A stretch of 63,594 bases of DNA, counting the filler, from Octopus bimaculoides (Eukaryota): NCBI RefSeq assembly GCF_001194135.2. It is 6 parts of 5 records of this genome, joined end to end, with 100 filler letters (N's around TTAATTAATTAA, not from the genome) between each part and the next. Parts side by side here need not be neighbours in the genome. Positions count along the whole stretch, not along the records: positions 28,330 to 53,847 come from NC_068988.1; positions 53,948 to 58,160 come from NC_068982.1; 4 more parts are not named here. One strand, given 5' to 3'. Both the position numbers and the translations under genes were made by a program. This document shows positions 42,989-53,949 of this stretch, one piece after another. Below the pieces are notes generated by a model. The model was not told the DNA's origin and made no database searches. It saw only the letters and a list, made by a program, of their open reading frames with translations. How positions within the stretch are numbered: the first letter of the stretch is position 1; every line of letters starts with the position of its first letter.

Positions 42989-43021
<33 letters not shown>

Positions 43022-43271
43022 NNNNNNNNNNNNNNNNNNNNNNNNNNNNNNNNNNNNNNNNNNNNNNNNNNNNNNNNNNNNNNNNNNNNNNNNNNNNNNN
43101 NNNNNNNNNNNNNNNNNNNNNNNNNNNNNNNNNNNNNNNNNNNNNNNNNNNNNNNNNNNNNNNNNNNNNNNNNNNNNNNNNNNNNNNNNNNNNNNNNNNN
43201 NNNNNNNNNNNNNNNNNNNNNNNNNNNNNNNNNNNNNNNNNNNNNNNNNNNNNNNNNNNNNNNNNNNNNNN

Positions 43272-43322
<51 letters not shown>

Positions 43323-43344
43323 TGTATACATATACAAACACATA

Positions 43345-44252: not shown

Positions 44253-44304
<52 letters not shown>

Positions 44305-45624
44305 NNNNNNNNNNNNNNNNNNNNNNNNNNNNNNNNNNNNNNNNNNNNNNNNNNNNNNNNNNNNNNNNNNNNNNNNNNNNNNNNNNNNNNNNNNNNNNNN
44401 NNNNNNNNNNNNNNNNNNNNNNNNNNNNNNNNNNNNNNNNNNNNNNNNNNNNNNNNNNNNNNNNNNNNNNNNNNNNNNNNNNNNNNNNNNNNNNNNNNNN
44501 NNNNNNNNNNNNNNNNNNNNNNNNNNNNNNNNNNNNNNNNNNNNNNNNNNNNNNNNNNNNNNNNNNNNNNNNNNNNNNNNNNNNNNNNNNNNNNNNNNNN
44601 NNNNNNNNNNNNNNNNNNNNNNNNNNNNNNNNNNNNNNNNNNNNNNNATATATATATATATATATATATATACATACATACAAACACATTGTTACTAGAG
44701 GTGCTCCAGATGGCCACAGCCTTAGGACTGAAACATGTAAAAGAATAAAAGAATTACATACATACATACATACATATGTACATATACATATCTATCTATC
44801 TATCTATCACGGCATGCTTGGATAAAATTAGCGACTATCGATATAGTAAAACAATGGTTAACTGGTGTCCAAATGGCTGGCAGACCAGATTAAAGTTCGT
44901 TATTAGCGGTGGAAGCACAATTAGTTCAAAATAGCATTCTAGATTTCTTACACAACCTGCTTATGCTGTAGAAAGCCACAAATCATCAGATCCCTCACAT
45001 CAGTAATGTTGTCAGGGACACATAGTTGTCTATTTATCAGATATTACATTTGTTTGTTCCGTCAACCTTTGCATTAATTGCAAAGTCTGTGCTTGTGGTG
45101 GTGAGTTGTAATGATGGCGGAGAGGGTGGGGCGCTAAGAAAGTGGCTTCAGTGCTAAGGCAGCCTGAAAATGCTTTGAAACTGCTGCTCTAGACCTTGAC
45201 CAAGGTCTAGAACAGTTTATCCTGGAGGACCTTACTACATTGCATGATCACGAGGAAATTGAAATTATATCGGTGAAACAAACAAAATTAATGGACCGAA
45301 TCAGTGTTAATAAAAGGAAAAACAAGTCAAGAATCTTGATGTTAGATATATCCCTTGCAGTGGTCACTTAGGCACCTGTGCGGATGGGAAATTCAAAATA
45401 TACCTCTTTTTCGACATAAAAGGGTAAAATGAACAAATATGAAAGACTAAGGTTAAGCACTTGAAAATACGCCATGAATGCAACCTGACAACCAAAAGTC
45501 TTTGCAAAGATAAATCGTCTGCAATTCTTCTGTCAAGTTTATGCTAACCTGCTTCTAAAGACTTTTATATAATATTTAAATATTATTTAAATATTGTGAC
45601 TCTATCAAAAAACTTTGCTTAATC

Positions 45625-45835
<211 letters not shown>

Positions 45836-46517
45836 CATATTGTTATAATATGGATCCTCCTCCACTTGTGTGCTGTCGTCGGCACTGTAATATTCTTGTC
45901 CCCATTAATATGCTGTGGCGTTATTCCGCGTCTTATTATCTTCGACTCGTGCACGTATCGTGCTATTGCTGATAGCTCAGCAAGACAACGACTTTAAAAT
46001 GTCTACCGTGACGGTAACTCGAACTCGTGTATATCACGTATCTGACACTGACCAGGGATACCACTATTGTGTTTTTCCACCCAGATCGGTTTTTTTTTTT
46101 TTTGAGCAATGATGGGTTTATGGATTTTAATTTCCAAATTTACATTAAATCGGGGTTTTTAAGTTAATTTTGGCTGCAAACTTATCTTTTAATGAGAATT
46201 CGGTGTCATACTCTTTGTATGCAATCTGTACCAAAGCTTCACCTCTTCTAATACTTTGTAAACTTTCTATATATCATCTATAATCATCTCACGTAATGAA
46301 TTTATTGATACAAACATTGTATGTGACATTGTATGCTGATCGTACGGCAACTACAAGTTACAACGCGTTGGTAGCCGCTTGTACACTTGTCTGAAACTCT
46401 GACACTGCCAGTCGACAACTTGACTCGGTTGATGGTGTACGCTTCGATTGTTACTCGCGATTCAAAATTTATTTAACAACGTTTTGGGTGAGTGCTTTTG
46501 TTTTGTAAACCATTGCG

Positions 46518-47058
46518 AAGTAATAGCAGACAATAGTGTGTCCAAAAAGAGGAAGAGGTACACCCAAAATTTCAAGAAGTCATGGTTGGAGGATGCTGAG
46601 CTTAAAAATTTGTTACAGCAAGGTGATAAAAATCCTGACACCTGCTACTGCGTTTGTTGCAACATTGTATTGAAAAATGCTAACAAATCAATGCTGTTAG
46701 CTCATAAAAACACTGCCAAACACAAGAAAGCTTTTGATTGTGCGAAATCTGCTATTAAATTAGATTCATTTATTGTTAACAAAAAAATCAGATGATACAT
46801 TAGATGAAAAAGTAGCTAAGGCAGACTTGCTACTAACAGGTTATGTTGCTGAATATCACGTACCTTTTATCCATATAAATCACTTAGCTGAAATTTGTAA
46901 AAGGGTCTTTCCCGATAGTGAAATAGCTAAAAATCTACAAATGAAAAAAAAAAAATTAACGTACATTATGCAAGACGGAATTGCACATTATGAACGAAAT
47001 GAAATCTTGGAAATTCTCAAGAAACAAAAGGTTTCATTATTAATACATGAGAGTACAT
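46518..47058 (+). pseudogene. hAT-like transposase N-terminal fragment (Zn finger plus start of catalytic region), frameshifted and truncated at a TA microsatellite
   Basis: KRKRYTQNFKKSWL...CYCVCCNIVL...LLAHKNTAKHKK, then VAKADLLLTGYVAEYHVPF...VFPDSEIAKNLQM...FPDS/SLLIHESTC (resembles S+++DESTD). Confidence 0.65.
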
Positions 47059-47090
47059 GTGTATGTACGTATGTATACATAAATACATAC

Positions 47091-47164
<74 letters not shown>

Positions 47165-47781
47165 AATGCAACCATATTTTTCACTTTGTTTATGTTTTCC
47201 TCAACGTCCTCACATCCGATCACTTATGCCGCTGATGCCACCAAAATGTACAATCATATATATACATACATATATGTAGTATAAATGAGTAACAAAGTGG
47301 TACATGTGTCAATTCATTACGGTCGTTTCAAGCGACTCCTTTAATTGATTGATGAAAACATTAGATCATTGGAAAGAAACCGTTTTCGTCAGATGACTGC
47401 ATGAACTTCAAACATAAAGGAAACTTCGACTGATTTTGTACAGTTACAATTCCACAGAGCCCAAATATTTACATTGATTCTGCTGCTATTCAGTTGGCAG
47501 AATGATTTTACCAAATAATTTATACCTTGTCTGAAAAAATAGAATTTAGAGGATAGTAGAGGTTATAGTAGGGGGAAGGAATAATTGAAATCAGTGATCA
47601 AGTTACCTATACTTCAAAACGAAAGAGGGAGGATTGTATCTAACCGTCTAGAATTAAGCATTATGAGAGTTGTACATGTACTCTGTTCAGTGGTGATAAA
47701 TTATTTAATGCCATAGGCGTGTGGGGTACTCCATCGTAACAAGGTGCCTCAATTTAAGTACCTAATGCAACTGAATTTTAG

Positions 47782-47941: not shown

Positions 47942-49769
47942 GTATGCGTGTGTGTGTGCATGCATGTTCGTGTCTATAAACTCATACATGTTATAAACAC
48001 TTATGCATGTGCATACATATACTTATGTTTGCATGCGTGCGTGAGTTTGTGAACGTGTTCGCGTGCGCACATGTTTGTTTACATTTCTTAGAGCGATGTC
48101 ATCTGTAAAATGTTATTCTTTATTTGGAAAGAGAAATAGTACTTCGAAAACAAAAGAGTTTGATATTTCCTTTCATACATATATTTGTGGGGGTGGGGTG
48201 AAACTGATAAACTGAATAAAAGTAACGATAAAAATTTGCAATTTTTTTTCGATTAAAATACCTGCAACTTCAGAGCAAAACCTACTAAAGTTCGCCTGCA
48301 TTTAACGTCTCCGACAATCACTCCCACTCCGTTTCTTGTTTTAGACTCCTTTTACCAGTGTGACCGATGGGACACACATTGCATTATATATTCACTTAAC
48401 TATTACTATGATTAGATAGATACGTATTCGTTTACATTTGCATAAACATTTGAAATTTTCAACTATTCGTTTGCTTAATATTGGTGTTTTATTTTCAATC
48501 TTTACAGTACCACTGAAGACTGATTTCAAGTAAACTGTCAGAAGCCAGACAACCTGACACGGTGCTAGCGTCGTTCTAGGTGACAATTGGAGTGCCTATT
48601 AGATGTACCGGGCTGTTAAGTATCACTGTTAAGACAGCGAAACGTTAGTGGTACGACACGAAATATTAATCTTTCGGTATGTAGAGGAGCAAATGTAGCG
48701 ATCAGTCAACAACTACTCCCTACAGACTCTCTACAGACAATTAATTTGTAAAAGCAGGATAAAAAAATACGTATTTGGTTAATATTTCCAGAAAAAATAA
48801 TGCAATCTTAAAGTTCCGCCTGTGGATGGGATGAAAAGTACTGTTGGGTAAAAAGTGTGGGAACACCGTGGTGGGGGGGAAAATATTATAAATTGGAGCT
48901 AATTAGTTATTGTTTGAAGCGACACGATTTTCAAAGTAGTGCTCTTAGCTATAAGACAAAACAAAAAGTCAGCAGGGGAAATCTAAAGATGACTGTTCAT
49001 CTGTGCTTTCTTCCATTACATGCTATAATGAAGTTACTGTGTTCGTCAAATTTAAGCAATAGTTCTATTAAATAAATAATTATTTTACATTCCTTTTAAG
49101 AACAGGGTTAGCAAAATTGTTTATTGTTTCTGGGGGGTTTTTCTGTTAGAGAAGGGGTTGTTTCTCTATTCTAATACTTCTGTCGTGTACCTAATAAATT
49201 TGATTTCAGCATTTTCTTTGGTCTATTATTTCATTTCATAAAATTGAACTATTTTCACACACGAGGTGGGGTGAATATCGAAATAAAATTCATTGCTTTA
49301 TTTTTTAAGTGAAATCGTAAATCAAATCAATAGAAAATATTTGTAGTTTTTTAAATCGAATTTCGATTAAAACTTGAATTTCGATCTCATTGCTCCCATC
49401 TTTATATCGGTTTATGAAATAATCTGTTTTATCCACATTAAATTTAAAATAAAAAGAAAAGATGGTAAAAAAAATAGAAATAATGCTTCAATCAAAAATC
49501 TCATTCTAAATGTGACAGAAAGATAAAAGACCAGGATTGGCCGCAAGGCTTTCATCTCATAATGTCCAATTCACTGTGGTGGACCACAGAAGTGATGAAG
49601 CACCGAACCAAAATCTCTTACGGTATGTTCCGAGTTCAAACGCCACCAGAATCAACTTTCTTCAGATTGGCAATCCATAAAATGAAAATAGCATTCACGT
49701 TACTAAGGATACTTAATTGGTTATATGTCTTTTACAAAATATGAGGCTCTATGTTAATATTTAATATAG

Positions 49770-49901
49770 TTATCCTATCGGTCTCTTTTGTTGAACTGTT
49801 AATGTTACGGGGACGTAAACACACCAACATCGGTTGTCAAGTGATGGTGACGGGTCAAACACGCACACACACACACACACACACAAACACGCACACACAC
49901 A

Positions 49902-49975
<74 letters not shown>

Positions 49976-50080
49976 ACGGGCTTCTTTCAGTTTCCGTCTA
50001 CCAAATCCACTCACAAGGCTTTGATCGGCCCGATGCTATAGTAGAAGACACTAGCCCACGGTGCCACGTGGTGGAACCTG
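49770..50080 (-). mobile_element. SINE family C, partial
   Basis: Reverse complement of the family C body with CA/TA microsatellite. Confidence 0.8.
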
Positions 50081-52294
50081 AAAGCATAGCCTGTGTTGTG
50101 TCTGTAGGGAAAGAAAGTCGCTCATCTGCTACTCATTGAAAAGTGAAAAAAATTGGAATACAATGATTACTTAATGCACTTTATATACTTTATGCACAAT
50201 TTTATACACTTAATATGCAGCACTCATAAACTAAATATTCACTCTTTTTTTCCATTTTCTCCTATAATAAAAAAGAACATATCCCGTACATATGATACAA
50301 CCTTTAGTTAAATTGCATATATCTGCCACGTAAATAAGCGTGAATATTTCACGGAGTTTCCCTTATGAGCATGTGTTACGTGATAAATGATATAAAAAAA
50401 ACTTAACTCAATTTAAAAAATACACTTTTCACTATCTAATCACCACCACCACCACCACCTCCATCTCCACCACTATTATCACCCCAATCGTCATCTCTCT
50501 CTCTCTCTCTCCTCTTTCTTCTCCTCTCTCTTTCTCTTCTCTCTCTCTCTCTCTCTCCCTCTCTCTCTCTCTCTCTCCCTACCTTCCTTTAACCTCACCA
50601 TCAGTACATCACCCTTCTAAATTTATATTTTTAACTCTCCTCTACTTTCAACTAACTTTTCTAACCATGTAATAAATATTACGTTCCCCCACCTCACGTC
50701 ATGGACGCTTATCTCTCCCTCTTTCTATCTCACTCTTCGCCTTCTCTTTTTCTCTCTCCTTTTTCTTTTTCCTCTCTTTCCCTTCAAATAATCACGTGAA
50801 AGTGTTACAATTACATTCCTTCTACCTTACGTCATGGACGCTTCTCTCTCCCTCTTTTTCTTCCTTCACTCTTTTTCTATCTCCCTCTTTTTCTCCCTCA
50901 CTCTCTTTCTTTCTCCCTCTTTTTCTCTAATTACGTGAAAACGTTACCGATGGGCTAAGTAACACAATGACAAGCGGAATTATTATAAAATAGCCTACAT
51001 CATCTTTAAATTTTCAATATTCTGTGGCTTAGTTATGACACCTGTCTAGATAGTCTTAGTATAAAGATCGTTGTGTAAATGTGTATGCATATTCAGTTGG
51101 TAAAGAGTGCGTCTTACATAAGATCCATTATATTTATTACATATTATGTGACACACAACGTATGCCAATAAATCATGTCTGCAGGATAGTTAACTAAGAG
51201 TCACGAAATTTTAATATGCACAGACCAATTTTCAGGTAGTTGTTTTCTTAGAGATGGTCCAGAATGTGACAACTGTATATTTAGTCCTGCCCTAAAAATC
51301 ATCTTGGGGATTGCAGCAGTGATTCTATCACGAAAGTGCGTCTACTTTATAAAGAAACGTAATCGCATATGAACATTCATGGGAGGTTTAATACCAGACC
51401 TGGTATGAAAATTAGATATCCGATATTTACAGCCTATCCTTTGGGATTGCTTGCTTGCAGATGTATCTATTGTTTCACAGATTGCGCTGTTTATGTAGAT
51501 TTCATTTTGTGTGTAATCTATTTTGGTAGGTTGGTAGGACTGGCCCGTAATACACAAACAGACGCTATGATGTAGTTATTTATAGAATTTGATATTAATG
51601 AATTTTATCTCTGTAACGTTGATTCGAAAAAGGAATAGAAAGAGAGTGGGTATGATTAAGAAGAGGAGAAATTCAATGAGGTCGCAATGTTCCATTTCGA
51701 AATTCATATGATCGACGACGACGTCTTTGAAAATGATATATGCTAATTACTATCGCTGAGAACTCGACATGGTGATGTGCTGTACATGTCATATAAGAAA
51801 TTCGTGTGAGTATCAGATGTTTGCAATCTTAGGTGGCATAGCACATAGAATATAATATTTGGCGGATCTTACATTGGAAGCACTGCTTATAAACTGGATC
51901 ATTTAAAAATCATTCGTTTTAAAATTTAAGTGGAGAAGTATAACCAAGATATCACGTTCACCGACAAACAAATTACTGTAAATCTGAAGATGAAGGAGGC
52001 TGTTCCTAATTAGTGCATTAATTCCTCTACCAATAATAAACTGTTTAATATAGCATTAGTAATCTACTCTATTACACACATCATCCTCACGTATCTGTGC
52101 GGATCAAATCTCATCTCTATTTTCTCTTGTGAATTCATTTTAAAACCAAAACACTGACATATACGATAAAAGTGTAAACCAAAGTCTTACATATTTTTGA
52201 TCTTTATTTACTGTTGTTTTCTTTCTAAATAGAATTGAAGTAACTGCCTAATACATTATTTTACTCTATTTTACAATAATTAATATATAATATA

Positions 52295-52513: not shown

Positions 52514-52705
52514 GTATGTATTTATATGTCTTTGTGTTTGTGCTTGACAACCGGGGTTGGTGTGTTTGCGTCCCCGTAACTTGGCGGTTCAGCAAAAGTG
52601 ACTGATAGAATGAGTACTAGGCTTACAAAAAATAAGTCCTCGGTCGATTTGTTCGACTAAAGGCCAGTGCCCTAGCATGGCTGCAGTCAAATGACTGAAA
52701 CAAAA
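52295..52705 (+). mobile_element. SINE family C, full length
   Basis: Head GGAGTGGCTGTGTGGTAAGTAGCTTGC through CAGTCAAATGACTGAAACA. Confidence 0.9.
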
Positions 52706-52918
52706 AATATACTGATCTAATATGCATGCAGAGACATGATGTTGTATTTAGAACGCTCTATAATGAAATTGTAATGTTATTGTCAGACCGAATATGCTTG
52801 AGAAACGTTCGAACTGGGGAACAAGCTACTCACAGCGTTTTGTCACGGAAAATATATCCAGTTTGTTGACAAATGGTTTGTATACACCTATGTCAGCTCG
52901 CAGCGCCGTCTACCCAGA

Positions 52919-52966
52919 CTGTGAGATGCAAGCATTTCGGAGTAGTAATCTGCTCTTCAGTCACAG
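52919..52966 (-). ncRNA. Type I hammerhead ribozyme motif (left arm)
   Basis: Minus strand: CTGTGA-CTGAAGA-GCAG(ATTACTA)CTCC-GAA-ATGC(TT)GCAT-C-TCACAG. Canonical CUGANGA/GAAA core, 6-bp stem I, AUC cleavage triplet, one C-C mismatch in stem II. Confidence 0.75.
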
Positions 52967-53128
52967 ACACCAGGAAAACGGCGCTGCGAGCTTATTGAAG
53001 AGACCGATTCTCTTATGCTTTTCCTGTTACCATAAGCGCACAGCGCTGCCAGTCGCCGTATGGCAGCTGGAAAAGCATAAGTGAATCAGTCTCTTCAATT
53101 AGCTAGCAGCGCCGCCTGCCTGGTGTAC

Positions 53129-53172
53129 GTGACCGAAGAGGGGATAACTACTCCGAAATGCTTGCATCTCAT
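53129..53172 (+). ncRNA. Type I hammerhead ribozyme motif (right arm)
   Basis: GTGA-CCGAAGA-GGGG(ATAACTA)CTCC-GAA-ATGC(TT)GCAT-C-TCAT. Intact stems, U4-to-C core change, enclosed by a 9-bp helix 53106-53114/53185-53193. AATAAA at 53224. Confidence 0.7.
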
Positions 53173-53949
53173 AGTCTGGTTAGACGGCGCTGCAAGTTGA
53201 CAGGTGTATACAAGCCATTTGTCAATAAACAGGTTATATTTTCCATGACAAAACGTTGTGAGTAACTTGTTCCCCAGTTCGAACGTGCATATTCGGTCTA
53301 ATAATAACATTGCAATCTCACATATCATTACTGAAAGCTTCCCCTCTGTAAAATACTCTATAATGAAATCCGTCGGAAGGATAATTCCGAGGACAAAGAA
53401 ATAAGAACCCACAGTATGGTAGAAGCCATAGCCACTCATAATAAAAGGGAGTACTAGTGGAATGTCCCAGTGAAAACCTCAATAAAATGTAAGCACAACA
53501 GACCTGATATAAGGATTTGGGATAGAGAAGAGAAATTGTGTGCAGTTGTGGAAATTAGCTGCCCAATGGATGTTAACATAAAACTGAAGATCAGTGAAAA
53601 AGAGAACACCTATGCTGAACTATAGAGAAATCTGCAGTTACTCTATCCACATTACAATTCGGGTTTATACATGTAATTATTGGGACCTTGGGATATGTAG
53701 CACACTACCTAAATACCAATTTTGAGAAGTATAGGCTTCTCAAAACTAGAAAGAAGAAAGTTGATTCGAAGACTACAGATCCAATCAATCACTGGAACTG
53801 TAAAAATCTGTAGAACTTTCCAGAAGTTTATCATTTACGTGTATATANNNNNNNNNNNNNNNNNNNNNNNNNNNNNNNNNNNNNNNNNNNNTTAATTAAT
53901 TAANNNNNNNNNNNNNNNNNNNNNNNNNNNNNNNNNNNNNNNNNNNNTT

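What the first reader, a model, noticed from the sequence alone, without database searches (positions are those of the whole stretch)
52756..53369. TSD-flanked 586-bp palindromic element with a hammerhead ribozyme in each polarity
Seen in sequence: (1) an exact 14-bp direct repeat CTCTATAATGAAAT (52756-52769, 53356-53369) brackets 586 bp with no recognisable coding content; (2) removing the insert plus one repeat restores the reading frame of the surrounding R4-like ORF (RHDVVFRTLYNE|IRRKD...HNRPDI), so this is a discrete insertion event; (3) the insert is one inverted repeat of two ~265-bp arms around a 24-nt spacer; (4) each arm holds a type I hammerhead pointing outward from the centre (minus 52919-52966, plus 53129-53172), with AATAAA or its variant downstream. 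Established knowledge: Penelope-like elements carry hammerheads in their pLTRs and can leave inverted pLTRs; non-autonomous hammerhead-bearing retrozymes exist; ribozymes in both polarities of a rod-like RNA are a hallmark of viroid-like RNAs. Inference: this is either a PLE insertion reduced to pLTR plus inverted pLTR, or a mobile non-autonomous 'ambisense' ribozyme element whose transcript from either strand is a ~560-nt hairpin containing one hammerhead.
Basis: partly seen in the sequence, partly recalled or inferred. Interest (0 to 1): 0.9.

Follow-up and report, generated by a model that had tools for sequence, protein, structure and literature searches.

The report
Head-to-head hammerhead repeat insertion in octopus
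The 586-bp palindrome is real, but it is most likely one old retrotransposition event that placed two back-to-back copies of a known kind of hammerhead-carrying repeat (Penelope-associated, retrozyme-like) into a decayed octopus LINE, not a new viroid-like element.

Summary
There is an exact 14-bp target-site duplication, a 586-bp insert made of two ~265-bp inverted arms around a 24-nt spacer, and a type-I hammerhead-shaped motif pointing outward in each arm. Homologous octopus LINE proteins and a paralogous O. bimaculoides locus read straight across the insertion point, so this is a discrete insertion. The hammerheads fit a structural descriptor (0 hits in 60 shuffles) but reach no Rfam threshold. 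One has a core mutation (U4C) and the other a helix II mismatch.

I found relatives of the arms (65-75% identity) in octopod-like sequencing-run contigs. One is a solo unit and one is three direct tandem units with a ~340-nt period. None is a foldback, and none lies next to a PLE ORF. The 35-nt extra sequence at the right end is part of the family unit; the left arm stops exactly where it begins.

Outward 3' ends, a one-sided 30-40-nt tail and a TSD match the published integration signature of Penelope-like elements, whose enzyme nicks and extends both strands from two start sites. The best reading is a twin, head-to-head insertion of a retrozyme-like unit that has since decayed neutrally. It is a new member of a known kind, of modest interest.

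The parts
52756..52769 (.). Left copy of the target-site duplication, CTCTATAATGAAAT. Its last 6 nt (TGAAAT) also resemble the element's own end (TGAGAT), so there is possible microhomology at the priming site.
52770..53034 (-). Left unit copy, 265 nt, with its sense on the minus strand. Its 5'-truncated end lies at the centre and its 3' end at 52770. It lacks the last ~35 nt (the tail) of the family unit.
52895..52992 (-). Long imperfect stem (17+5 bp) extending helix I and enclosing the left hammerhead. It is conserved across the family and shows compensatory changes.
   Evidence: (I4)
52919..52966 (-). Type-I hammerhead-like motif: CUGUGA CUGAAGA GCAG-AUUACUA-CUCC GAAA UGCUUGCA UC|UCACAG. 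The core is complete, helix II has a C:C mismatch (52952/52940), and the predicted cleavage is after the C opposite 52925.
53035..53058 (+). 24-nt spacer. At least its right part (GTCGCCG, continuing into TAT) is homologous to the family, so it is the 5' extension of the right unit. The junction between the two cDNAs lies at about 53034/53035.
53059..53320 (+). Right unit copy (the part that pairs with the left arm), with its sense on the plus strand.
53101..53198 (+). Long stem enclosing the right hammerhead. It is degraded, with an A:A mismatch and a wobble pair.
   Evidence: (I5)
53129..53172 (+). Hammerhead-like motif with a core mutation: GUGA CCGAAGA GGGG-AUAACUA-CUCC GAAA UGCUUGCA UC|UCAU. 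U4->C is at 53134, helix I has only 4 bp, and the predicted cleavage is after C53168.
53321..53355 (+). One-sided 35-nt 3' tail, CATATCATTACTGAAAGCTTCCCCTCTGTAAAATA. It is homologous to the ends of the L005 and L006 A/B/C units, so it derives from the element and not from the target.
53356..53369 (.). Right copy of the target-site duplication.
52727..53847 (+). Host: a decayed C-terminal fragment of an endonuclease-bearing LINE (RHD...NRPDI...D...E motifs, several stops), interrupted by the insert. It runs off the end of the piece.

Best explanation
A single target-primed retrotransposition event, most likely carried out in trans by a Penelope-like element (PLE) RT/GIY-YIG enzyme, inserted two copies of one ~340-nt hammerhead-bearing repeat unit head-to-head into an old LINE fragment of an octopus genome.

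Proposed steps:
1. The enzyme nicked the two DNA strands 14 bp apart; this stagger later became the TSD.
2. Each 3'-OH primed reverse transcription of the unit RNA. One strand used the downstream start site, giving the right copy with its 35-nt tail. The other used a start site ~35 nt further in, giving the left copy without a tail.
3. The two cDNAs ran inward for ~265 and ~300-320 nt and were joined at the centre.

The product is a palindrome whose arms each carry the unit's type-I hammerhead pointing outward. The unit belongs to a family that elsewhere occurs as solo copies and direct tandem arrays. That is the architecture of animal non-LTR retrozymes, which are thought to be non-autonomous PLE derivatives. 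After insertion the copy decayed neutrally (arms now 88.8% identical), damaging both ribozymes.

Shown: the insertion, the TSD, the twin inverted copies, the element-derived one-sided tail, the hammerhead-shaped motifs, the existence and layouts of the family, and the conserved stem.

Inferred: that a PLE enzyme did it, that both arms arose in one event from identical templates, and that the ribozymes are now inactive.
For: Clean insertion with TSD.

Twin inverted copies with 3' ends outward.

Family relatives at 65-75% identity: L005 is a solo unit, and L006/7/8 carry three direct tandem units with a period of 335-397 nt.

The tail at 53321-53355 aligns to the ends of all four other units, and the left arm stops where the tail starts.

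The spacer aligns with the 5' continuation of the unit.

Literature:
- PLE insertions often carry an adjacent inverted 5'-truncated copy and a 30-40-bp tail at one end only, and hammerheads lie in the terminal repeats (PMC8557442).
- Purified PLE protein cleaves and extends both strands and starts reverse transcription at two adjacent internal sites that define the tail. Hammerhead cleavage is not needed for insertion (PMC11167929).
- Paired hammerheads 100-700 bp apart on opposite strands were already reported in Schistosoma (PMC4209133).
- Retrozymes appear to be PLE-derived (bioRxiv 10.64898/2026.07.22.740005).

PLEs live in this genome: a GIY-YIG fragment lies at 34169-34573, and PLEs are abundant in Octopus (PMC13282606).

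Arm divergence (28 substitutions in 250 sites, 18 transitions, 2 indels) is compatible with an intact 14-bp TSD (P=0.19), so in-situ decay from identical arms is sufficient.

The hammerhead region is no better conserved than the rest of the arms.
Against: No autonomous PLE whose terminal repeat matches the arms could be found. The tools gave no DNA search of an octopus genome.

The GIY-YIG fragment in the window shares no DNA similarity with the insert, and its protein search returned nothing.

Only two other loci of the family were recovered, so the frequency of foldback copies is unknown.

The PAc study reports no homology between the cleaved target and the start site, whereas here 5 of 6 nt match at the left end.

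Rfam hammerhead models do not recognise the motifs.

The C at core position 4 is shared by the right arm and L005. The template itself may therefore already have had a defective core, and the left arm's CUGA could be a CpG-decay product.
Confidence: 0.68

Rival explanations
1. The foldback itself is the mobile unit. It would be a non-autonomous 'ambisense' ribozyme element that propagates as a palindrome, whose hairpin transcript from either strand carries one hammerhead.
For: The exact 14-bp TSD contrasts with ~11% arm divergence, which could mean the arms were already divergent at insertion. The whole insert folds into one hairpin at -398 kcal/mol, z = -38.
Against: Neither of the two other family loci is a foldback; one is solo and one is a direct tandem. 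P(TSD intact) = 0.19 under in-situ decay, so divergent arms at birth are not needed. In the full hairpin each hammerhead is buried in ~270 bp of duplex. The hammerheads are not preferentially conserved, and one has a core mutation. The termini are asymmetric because of the 35-nt tail.
Confidence: 0.06
2. Two-step origin. Either a second unit inserted in opposite orientation exactly at the 5' end of a first one, or a solo insertion was later duplicated in inverted orientation (for example by fold-back replication or repair).
For: The arms differ by 11% plus a 7-bp and a 2-bp indel. This would fit two different source copies.
Against: The only direct repeat brackets the whole palindrome. No second TSD flanks either arm alone. 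An inverted duplication confined exactly within the TSD is improbable. A single both-strand priming event explains the layout and the tail asymmetry.
Confidence: 0.09
3. The unit was mobilised by a LINE (RLE- or APE-type) reverse transcriptase, and the inversion arose by twin priming. No PLE enzyme was involved.
For: LINEs (Dong-R4, RTE, CR1) are very active in octopus (PMC13282606). TSDs of 10-20 bp are typical of LINE-mediated insertions.
Against: Twin priming joins different segments of one RNA and does not give two copies of the same 3' segment. There is no poly(A) or microsatellite tail. The alternative 3' ends ~35 nt apart and the hammerhead are hallmarks of PLEs.
Confidence: 0.1
4. It is a foldback or MITE-type DNA transposon that happens to contain hammerhead-like motifs.
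For: It has long inverted arms, no coding capacity, and a flanking direct repeat.
Against: The actual termini are not inverted repeats of each other: the right end carries 35 unpaired nt. A 14-bp TSD is longer than those of known cut-and-paste superfamilies (own knowledge). Relatives occur as direct tandem arrays and solo units of a single arm.
Confidence: 0.03

Closest known systems
Penelope-like element insertions with an inverted 5'-truncated copy and a one-sided 30-40-bp tail (Evgen'ev & Arkhipova; Craig et al. 2021, PMC8557442; PAc in vitro work, PMC11167929)
   Same: Head-to-head inverted copies with 3' ends outward. A 35-nt extension at only one end that is part of the element sequence. 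A TSD. A type-I hammerhead in the terminal region. An A/T-rich target.
   Different: There is no RT/GIY-YIG ORF in or near the insert or the related loci. Both copies are only about one terminal unit long. Homology to an autonomous PLE has not been shown.
Animal non-LTR retrozymes: tandem 170-400-bp repeats with type-I hammerheads (Cervera & de la Pena 2020, PMC7229834; Li et al. 2026 preprint)
   Same: The family unit is ~340 nt, non-coding and below 50% GC. It carries one type-I hammerhead with a 6-bp helix I, a 4-bp helix II and a short helix III. It occurs as a direct tandem array (L006) and as solo copies, with TSDs longer than 4 bp.
   Different: The window copy is an inverted dimer, not a direct tandem. 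circRNA expression was not tested. The hammerheads in all copies recovered are damaged to some degree.
Paired minimal hammerheads on opposite strands in Schistosoma mansoni (Cervera & de la Pena 2014, PMC4209133)
   Same: Two hammerhead motifs lie 100-700 bp apart on opposite strands and are attributed to truncated PLEs. Here the two cleavage sites are 243 bp apart.
   Different: That report did not describe TSDs, tails or the palindromic anatomy. The hammerheads here are of the canonical rather than the minimal type.
Viroid-like / Avsunviroidae-type circular RNAs with hammerheads in both polarities
   Same: A ribozyme is readable on each strand, and the predicted RNA fold is rod-like.
   Different: Here both features come from a DNA-level inverted duplication of one sense unit. 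Each transcript would carry only one sense ribozyme, buried in a perfect-hairpin duplex. It sits in the genome as an insertion with a TSD, and nothing indicates RNA-RNA replication.

Membership tests
Hammerhead ribozyme, type I | Conserved core C3-U4-G5-A6-N7-G8-A9, G12-A13-A14, A15.1-U16.1 and H17 | tested here: inconclusive
   The left (minus-strand) copy has every core nucleotide. The right copy has C at position 4 (53134). Among relatives, L006 unit C has CUGAUGA but has lost the GAAA box. L005 has CCGAGGA and L006 unit B is degenerate.
Hammerhead ribozyme, type I | Three helices around the core with helix I open; G10.1-C11.1 closes helix II | tested here: met
   The descriptor scan finds both copies and nothing else in 25.5 kb, and 0 hits in 60 shuffles. 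The left copy has a 6-bp helix I and a 4-bp helix II with one C:C mismatch. The right copy has a 4-bp helix I and a perfect helix II. Helix III is 3 bp with a CUUG loop in both.
Hammerhead ribozyme, type I | Match to the curated covariance models (Rfam Hammerhead_1/3/II/HH9/HH10) at gathering score | tested here: not met
   No hit at gathering score. At E<=10 the only hit is a truncated 10.6-bit (gathering 37) Hammerhead_II fragment covering the CUGAAGAG box of the left arm. There is nothing on the right arm.
Hammerhead ribozyme, type I | Self-cleavage after H17 | not testable with these tools
   This needs in vitro transcription and a cleavage assay. From established mutagenesis knowledge, U4C should be strongly deleterious.
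Penelope-like element (PLE) | ORF with a telomerase-like RT plus a GIY-YIG endonuclease | tested here: not met
   The insert has no coding similarity. No RT or GIY-YIG ORF lies in L005 or L006 around the related units. The window's own GIY-YIG fragment (34169-34573, Pfam E=0.012) is 18 kb away and unrelated in DNA.
Penelope-like element (PLE) | Insertion signature: adjacent inverted 5'-truncated copy, optional 30-40-bp tail at one end, TSD, hammerhead in the terminal repeat | tested here: met
   compared with the descriptions in PMC8557442 and PMC11167929.
Penelope-like element (PLE) | Sequence homology of the arms to the pLTR of an autonomous PLE in the same genome | not testable with these tools
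   No DNA search of an octopus genome or of Repbase/Dfam was available. The protein search with the window's EN fragment found nothing.
Non-LTR retrozyme | Non-coding unit of ~170-400 bp with one type-I hammerhead, found as direct tandem copies | tested here: met
   L006/L007/L008 carry three direct units with spacings of 335-397 nt. No ORF was found. The hammerheads in those units are decayed.
Non-LTR retrozyme | Expression as small circular RNAs delimited by the hammerhead cleavage site | not testable with these tools
   No read-level RNA data were available. The only hint is that L006 unit A starts within ~5 nt of the predicted cleavage site.
Foldback / MITE DNA transposon | Terminal inverted repeats at the true ends of the insertion | tested here: not met
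   The left end is TGTAATGTTATTG... and the right end is ...CCCTCTGTAAAATA. The 35 nt at the right end have no inverted partner.
RLE-bearing LINE (R2/R4/Dong type), the host of the insertion | C-terminal zinc-binding motif followed by an RHD/N ... (K/R)PD ... D ... E endonuclease region | tested here: inconclusive
   The motifs are visible in the window copy and its homologues. P0006 has a weak zf-RVT match, E=0.06. There is no PDB sequence match. Assignment to the R4 clade was not tested.

The most novel reading that the evidence does not exclude
The palindrome is one copy of a propagating foldback retrozyme family. Its hairpin transcript would be processed, either by the hammerhead at its tip-proximal stem or by Dicer, and re-integrated by PLE enzymes. 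That would make it a new 'ambisense' class of ribozyme-bearing non-autonomous retroelement, and possibly a source of small RNAs against PLEs.
Probability: 0.05. Interest if true: 0.7.

Novelty: new member of a known kind. Interest (0 to 1): 0.3.

Why it matters
The hammerhead-bearing ~340-nt repeat family in octopods does not seem to have been described; my literature searches found no paper pairing hammerheads or retrozymes with cephalopods.

This one copy is a clean anatomical footprint. It has an exact TSD, an empty paralogous site, twin inverted copies and alternative 3' ends 35 nt apart. A non-coding retrozyme-like unit therefore bears the integration signature of Penelope-like elements, which fits the recent in vitro finding that a PLE enzyme primes on both strands from two start sites. 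It gives small, independent support to the idea that animal retrozymes are mobilised by PLEs.

It does not open a new category. The 'ribozymes in both polarities' are a by-product of DNA-level inversion.

Tried and rejected
Rfam: searched at gathering score over the whole piece. Also searched at E<=10 over 1.4 kb, 116 nt, 61 nt and 59 nt. There was no usable hammerhead hit.

Second copy in the piece: BLAST found none. A covariance model built from five family copies found no further copy in the window or in loci L001, L002 and L004-L006.

Protein searches:
- Pseudo-ORF of the left arm in the word-indexed database: nothing.
- The window's GIY-YIG ORF in the same database: nothing.
- Exact look-ups of window ORFs: not on record.
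- The exhaustive HMMER search with the pseudo-ORF was the step that worked.

Exact DNA patterns: a 21-mer of the hammerhead and a degenerate 25-mer of the most conserved block gave 0 hits in metagenome contigs. The 21-mer alone gave 0 hits in viral and prokaryotic genome contigs.

PDB sequence search with the host ORF: nothing.

Coding remnant of a PLE EN inside the arms: none. A conserved ORF start downstream of the hammerhead, as in the anole PLE: none, because both arms have the same stop.

AATAAA as a poly(A) signal: rejected, because it is not conserved in the family.

A longer TSD (21-25 bp with mismatches): cannot be decided. The tail alignment to L006 units favours 14 bp.

The organism behind runs SRR11869384/90/91 could not be identified from the literature.
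Full report
**What is in the sequence**

The 14-mer CTCTATAATGAAAT occurs exactly at 52756-52769 and 53356-53369 and brackets 586 bp. The insert is one inverted repeat. Its arms are 52770-53034 and 53059-53320, around a 24-nt spacer, and no second copy exists elsewhere in the piece.

The right arm is followed by 35 nt (53321-53355) that have no partner on the left.

Excluding gaps, the arms differ at 28 of 250 sites (18 transitions, 10 transversions). There is also a 7-bp and a 2-bp indel. This gives 88.8% identity and a Jukes-Cantor distance of 0.12. As RNA the whole insert folds into one ~270-bp hairpin (-398 kcal/mol, z = -38), which is the trivial consequence of the inverted repeat.

**Is it a discrete insertion?**

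With the insert and one repeat removed, the flanks translate to ...RHDVVFRTLYNE|IRRKDNSEDKEIRT...KHNRPDIRIWDREEKLCAVVEISCP.... A protein search with this found six relatives. They include Octopus bimaculoides XP_014788340.1 and LOC106878562, plus unnamed proteins from ENA and Logan assemblies.

These relatives read MRHDVVAKTMYNAIRRKDSPENK... and ...VYNEIRRKDIPEDKEIRT... straight through the junction without a gap. Paralogous DNA from O. bimaculoides chromosome CM046628.1 (L001) carries ACTCTATAATGAAAT|CCATCGGAAGG uninterrupted. L002 and L004 align through the same site.

The host is therefore a decayed C-terminal fragment of an endonuclease-bearing LINE in an octopod genome. One relative has a weak zf-RVT match. 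Assignment to the R4 clade was not tested. The TSD is at least 14 bp. Weak similarity continues 7-11 nt further upstream, but the family alignment described below shows that those bases belong to the element's tail.

**The hammerheads**

Read outward from the centre, the two arms give:
- Left arm (minus strand): CUGUGA-CUGAAGA-GCAG-AUUACUA-CUCC-GAAA-UGCUUGCA-UC|UCACAG.
- Right arm (plus strand): GUGA-CCGAAGA-GGGG-AUAACUA-CUCC-GAAA-UGCUUGCA-UC|UCAU.

I wrote a descriptor in the style used in this field: core boxes, helix II closed by G10.1-C11.1, a short helix III, UH, and helix I of at least 4 bp. It finds none in 60 dinucleotide-preserving shuffles. A more relaxed minimal-hammerhead scan finds nothing in the piece or in L001.

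The left copy has a complete core, a 6-bp helix I and a 4-bp helix II with one C:C mismatch. The right copy has a perfect helix II but C instead of the invariant U4 (53134), and only a 4-bp helix I.

Rfam does not recognise either copy. There is nothing at gathering score. At E<=10 the only hit is a truncated 10.6-bit fragment of Hammerhead_II over the CUGAAGAG box. 'Hammerhead' therefore rests on the descriptor and on family context, not on a curated model.

Each motif sits at the tip of a long imperfect stem that extends helix I (52895-52992 and 53101-53198).

**Relatives**

No DNA search of an octopus genome was available, and exact-pattern scans of the metagenome, viral and prokaryotic collections were empty.

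What worked was treating the chance ORF across the left arm (52794-53081) as a protein and running it against 1.84 billion representatives. It gave three hits.

P0009 is a Nucella lapillus 'hypothetical protein' made of 55-residue repeats. The repeat implies a ~165-nt tandem array in the DNA. It matches the query only over the stretch that is the antisense translation of the hammerhead boxes.

P0007 and P0008 come from Logan assemblies of runs SRR11869384, SRR11869390 and SRR11869391. Two of those runs also carry a copy of the host LINE. Their contigs could be fetched. They match the window arms at 65-75% identity.
- L005 holds one solo unit.
- L006/L007/L008 are the same locus seen in three runs. 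It holds three units in direct tandem, with spacings of 335-397 nt; the largest spacing is inflated by a 63-nt internal duplication.

None of these loci is a foldback, and none has an RT or GIY-YIG ORF within the ~0.6-1.2 kb available on either side.

**What the family alignment shows**

1. The 35-nt tail of the right arm aligns with the ends of L005 and of all three L006 units. It is therefore element sequence, not target. The left arm stops exactly where the tail begins.
2. The right part of the spacer (TCGCCGTAT) matches the 5' continuation of the unit in L005 and L006. The spacer therefore belongs to the right copy, which covers about 304-321 nt of a ~340-nt unit.
3. The AATAAA of the right arm is private. 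The family consensus at that position is CAACAAG.
4. Core position 4 is U in the left arm and in L006 unit C, and C in the right arm and in L005. The site is a CpG, so the ancestral state of the window's element is ambiguous.

Across five copies, the hammerhead plus its enclosing stem keeps 82.8% of cells paired. Seven pairs show changes on both sides. Controls with the 3' partners slid by 1-3 columns give 33-44% pairing and 2-4 such pairs. In the shuffle control, 19 of 500 shuffles reach the observed pairing and 51 of 500 reach the observed number of double changes. This is modest support that the stem was selected during the family's spread. Helix II is the least well kept, at 68%.

**Mechanism**

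The anatomy has three parts: two copies of the same 3' segment with their 3' ends outward and their 5'-truncated ends meeting in the centre; a 30-40-nt extension at one end only; and a TSD.

This is the published signature of Penelope-like elements. Craig et al. describe the adjacent inverted 5'-truncated copy and the one-sided 30-40-bp tail, and place hammerheads in the terminal repeats (PMC8557442). The in vitro study of the anole element shows three things. The enzyme cleaves and extends both strands, unlike R2 or L1. Reverse transcription starts at two adjacent internal sites whose spacing is the tail. Hammerhead cleavage is dispensable for insertion (PMC11167929). Paired hammerheads 100-700 bp apart on opposite strands were already noted in Schistosoma (PMC4209133).

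The unit's own layout elsewhere is a non-coding ~340-nt direct tandem repeat with one type-I hammerhead. That is the layout of animal non-LTR retrozymes (PMC7229834), which a recent preprint derives from PLE terminal repeats.

PLEs are present in this genome. A 5'-truncated GIY-YIG fragment lies at 34169-34573, next to a (TA)n run, and PLEs are abundant in Octopus (PMC13282606).

I therefore read the insert as one PLE-type, both-strand-primed insertion of a retrozyme-like unit.

**Age and function**

If the arms were identical at birth, a divergence of 0.112 still leaves a 19% chance that a 14-bp TSD stays intact. Pre-diverged arms are therefore not needed. On the octopus calibration quoted in PMC13282606 (JC 0.09 is about 25 My), 0.06 per arm is roughly 15-20 My. 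This is a rough inference.

The 48-nt hammerhead region differs at 7 positions (14.6%), against 11.2% overall. There has thus been no purifying selection on the ribozymes since insertion. This copy is best regarded as a dead relic. A read-through transcript would be a long hairpin, and could in principle feed small-RNA pathways, but nothing here tests that.

**Comparison and verdict**

The 'ambisense, viroid-like mobile foldback' reading is not supported.

This is a new member of a known kind. Its value is as a clean footprint linking a retrozyme-like repeat to PLE-style integration in a cephalopod.

The decisive test could not be run with these tools. It is a census of the family's layouts, 3' ends and TSDs in an octopus genome, together with a search for a PLE with a matching terminal repeat.

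Noticed in passing
window 34169-34573 (+), with 3' UTR to ~34950 and a (TA)n run at ~34955-34975: A 5'-truncated Penelope-like element remnant. The ORF has a CX2C...GIY-YIG-type endonuclease domain (LIYVLRCSGCRQNYIGSTG; Pfam GIY-YIG E=0.012, below cut-off) and ends next to a TA microsatellite. No hammerhead was detected downstream, and it shares no DNA similarity with the palindrome.
   Followed up: partly
L006 2166-2160 (minus strand), also L007/L008: The first tandem unit (unit A) begins within about 5 nt of the predicted hammerhead cleavage site (...aaagaat|atc|ACACAGTCTAGG versus GCAUC|UCACAGUCUGG). It directly abuts an A-rich sequence ending in tgaaacaagtaaaa that looks like a SINE tail. 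This could be a 5' end defined by self-cleavage, or a coincidence.
   Followed up: no
L005 ~1040-1033 and ~727-720 (minus strand): The solo unit is bracketed by an 8-bp direct repeat, GTTACTAG. Its GTTAC is also the end of the unit's own tail. It is therefore either a TSD or terminal redundancy from copying slightly more than one unit of a multimeric or circular template.
   Followed up: no
P0009 / P0010 (Nucella lapillus KAL8586503.1, 560 aa, and KAL8586504.1, 4398 aa): P0009 is annotated as a 'hypothetical protein' and consists of 55-residue tandem repeats. These are most likely translations through a ~165-nt hammerhead-bearing satellite, because the motif ...LRSSCFILGHQ... matches the antisense reading of the hammerhead boxes. 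It is probably an annotation artefact. P0010 is in the same 90% cluster, but I did not read its sequence. The DNA could not be fetched.
   Followed up: partly
window 52540-52715; also 35463-35870 and 49767-50082: Copies of a short interspersed repeat (...GTAACTTGGCGGTTCAGCAAAAGTGACTGATAGAATGAGTACTAGGCTTACAAAAAATAAGTCC...GACTGAAACAA). Copies 69-85% identical occur at several places in O. bimaculoides locus L001. One lies immediately upstream of the host LINE fragment.
   Followed up: partly
L006 1359-1427 and 1422-1490: A 63-nt internal tandem duplication of the most conserved block of the unit (GGTGTATACACACCATTTGTCAAC...) inside unit C. It lengthens that period to 397 nt.
   Followed up: no
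window 53463-53524 (+): A weak Rfam match to the C/D-box snoRNA family snoZ107_R87 (30 bits against gathering 50, E=0.0007) inside the LINE coding fragment. It lacks the whole central part of the model and is probably chance.
   Followed up: no
window 46448-47165 (+): Two adjacent ORFs (115 and 130 aa, lysine-rich, with CX2C...H...H-like spacing) that look like the N-terminal part of a transposase-derived protein. Pfam gave no significant match.
   Followed up: partly
window 31840-32120, 43020-43330 and 44300-44640 (approx.): Runs of N (873 in total in the piece) sit inside TA/CA/ATAC microsatellites, so these are assembly gaps at simple repeats. Outside the gaps, the piece is about 35% GC and very rich in microsatellites.
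   Followed up: no
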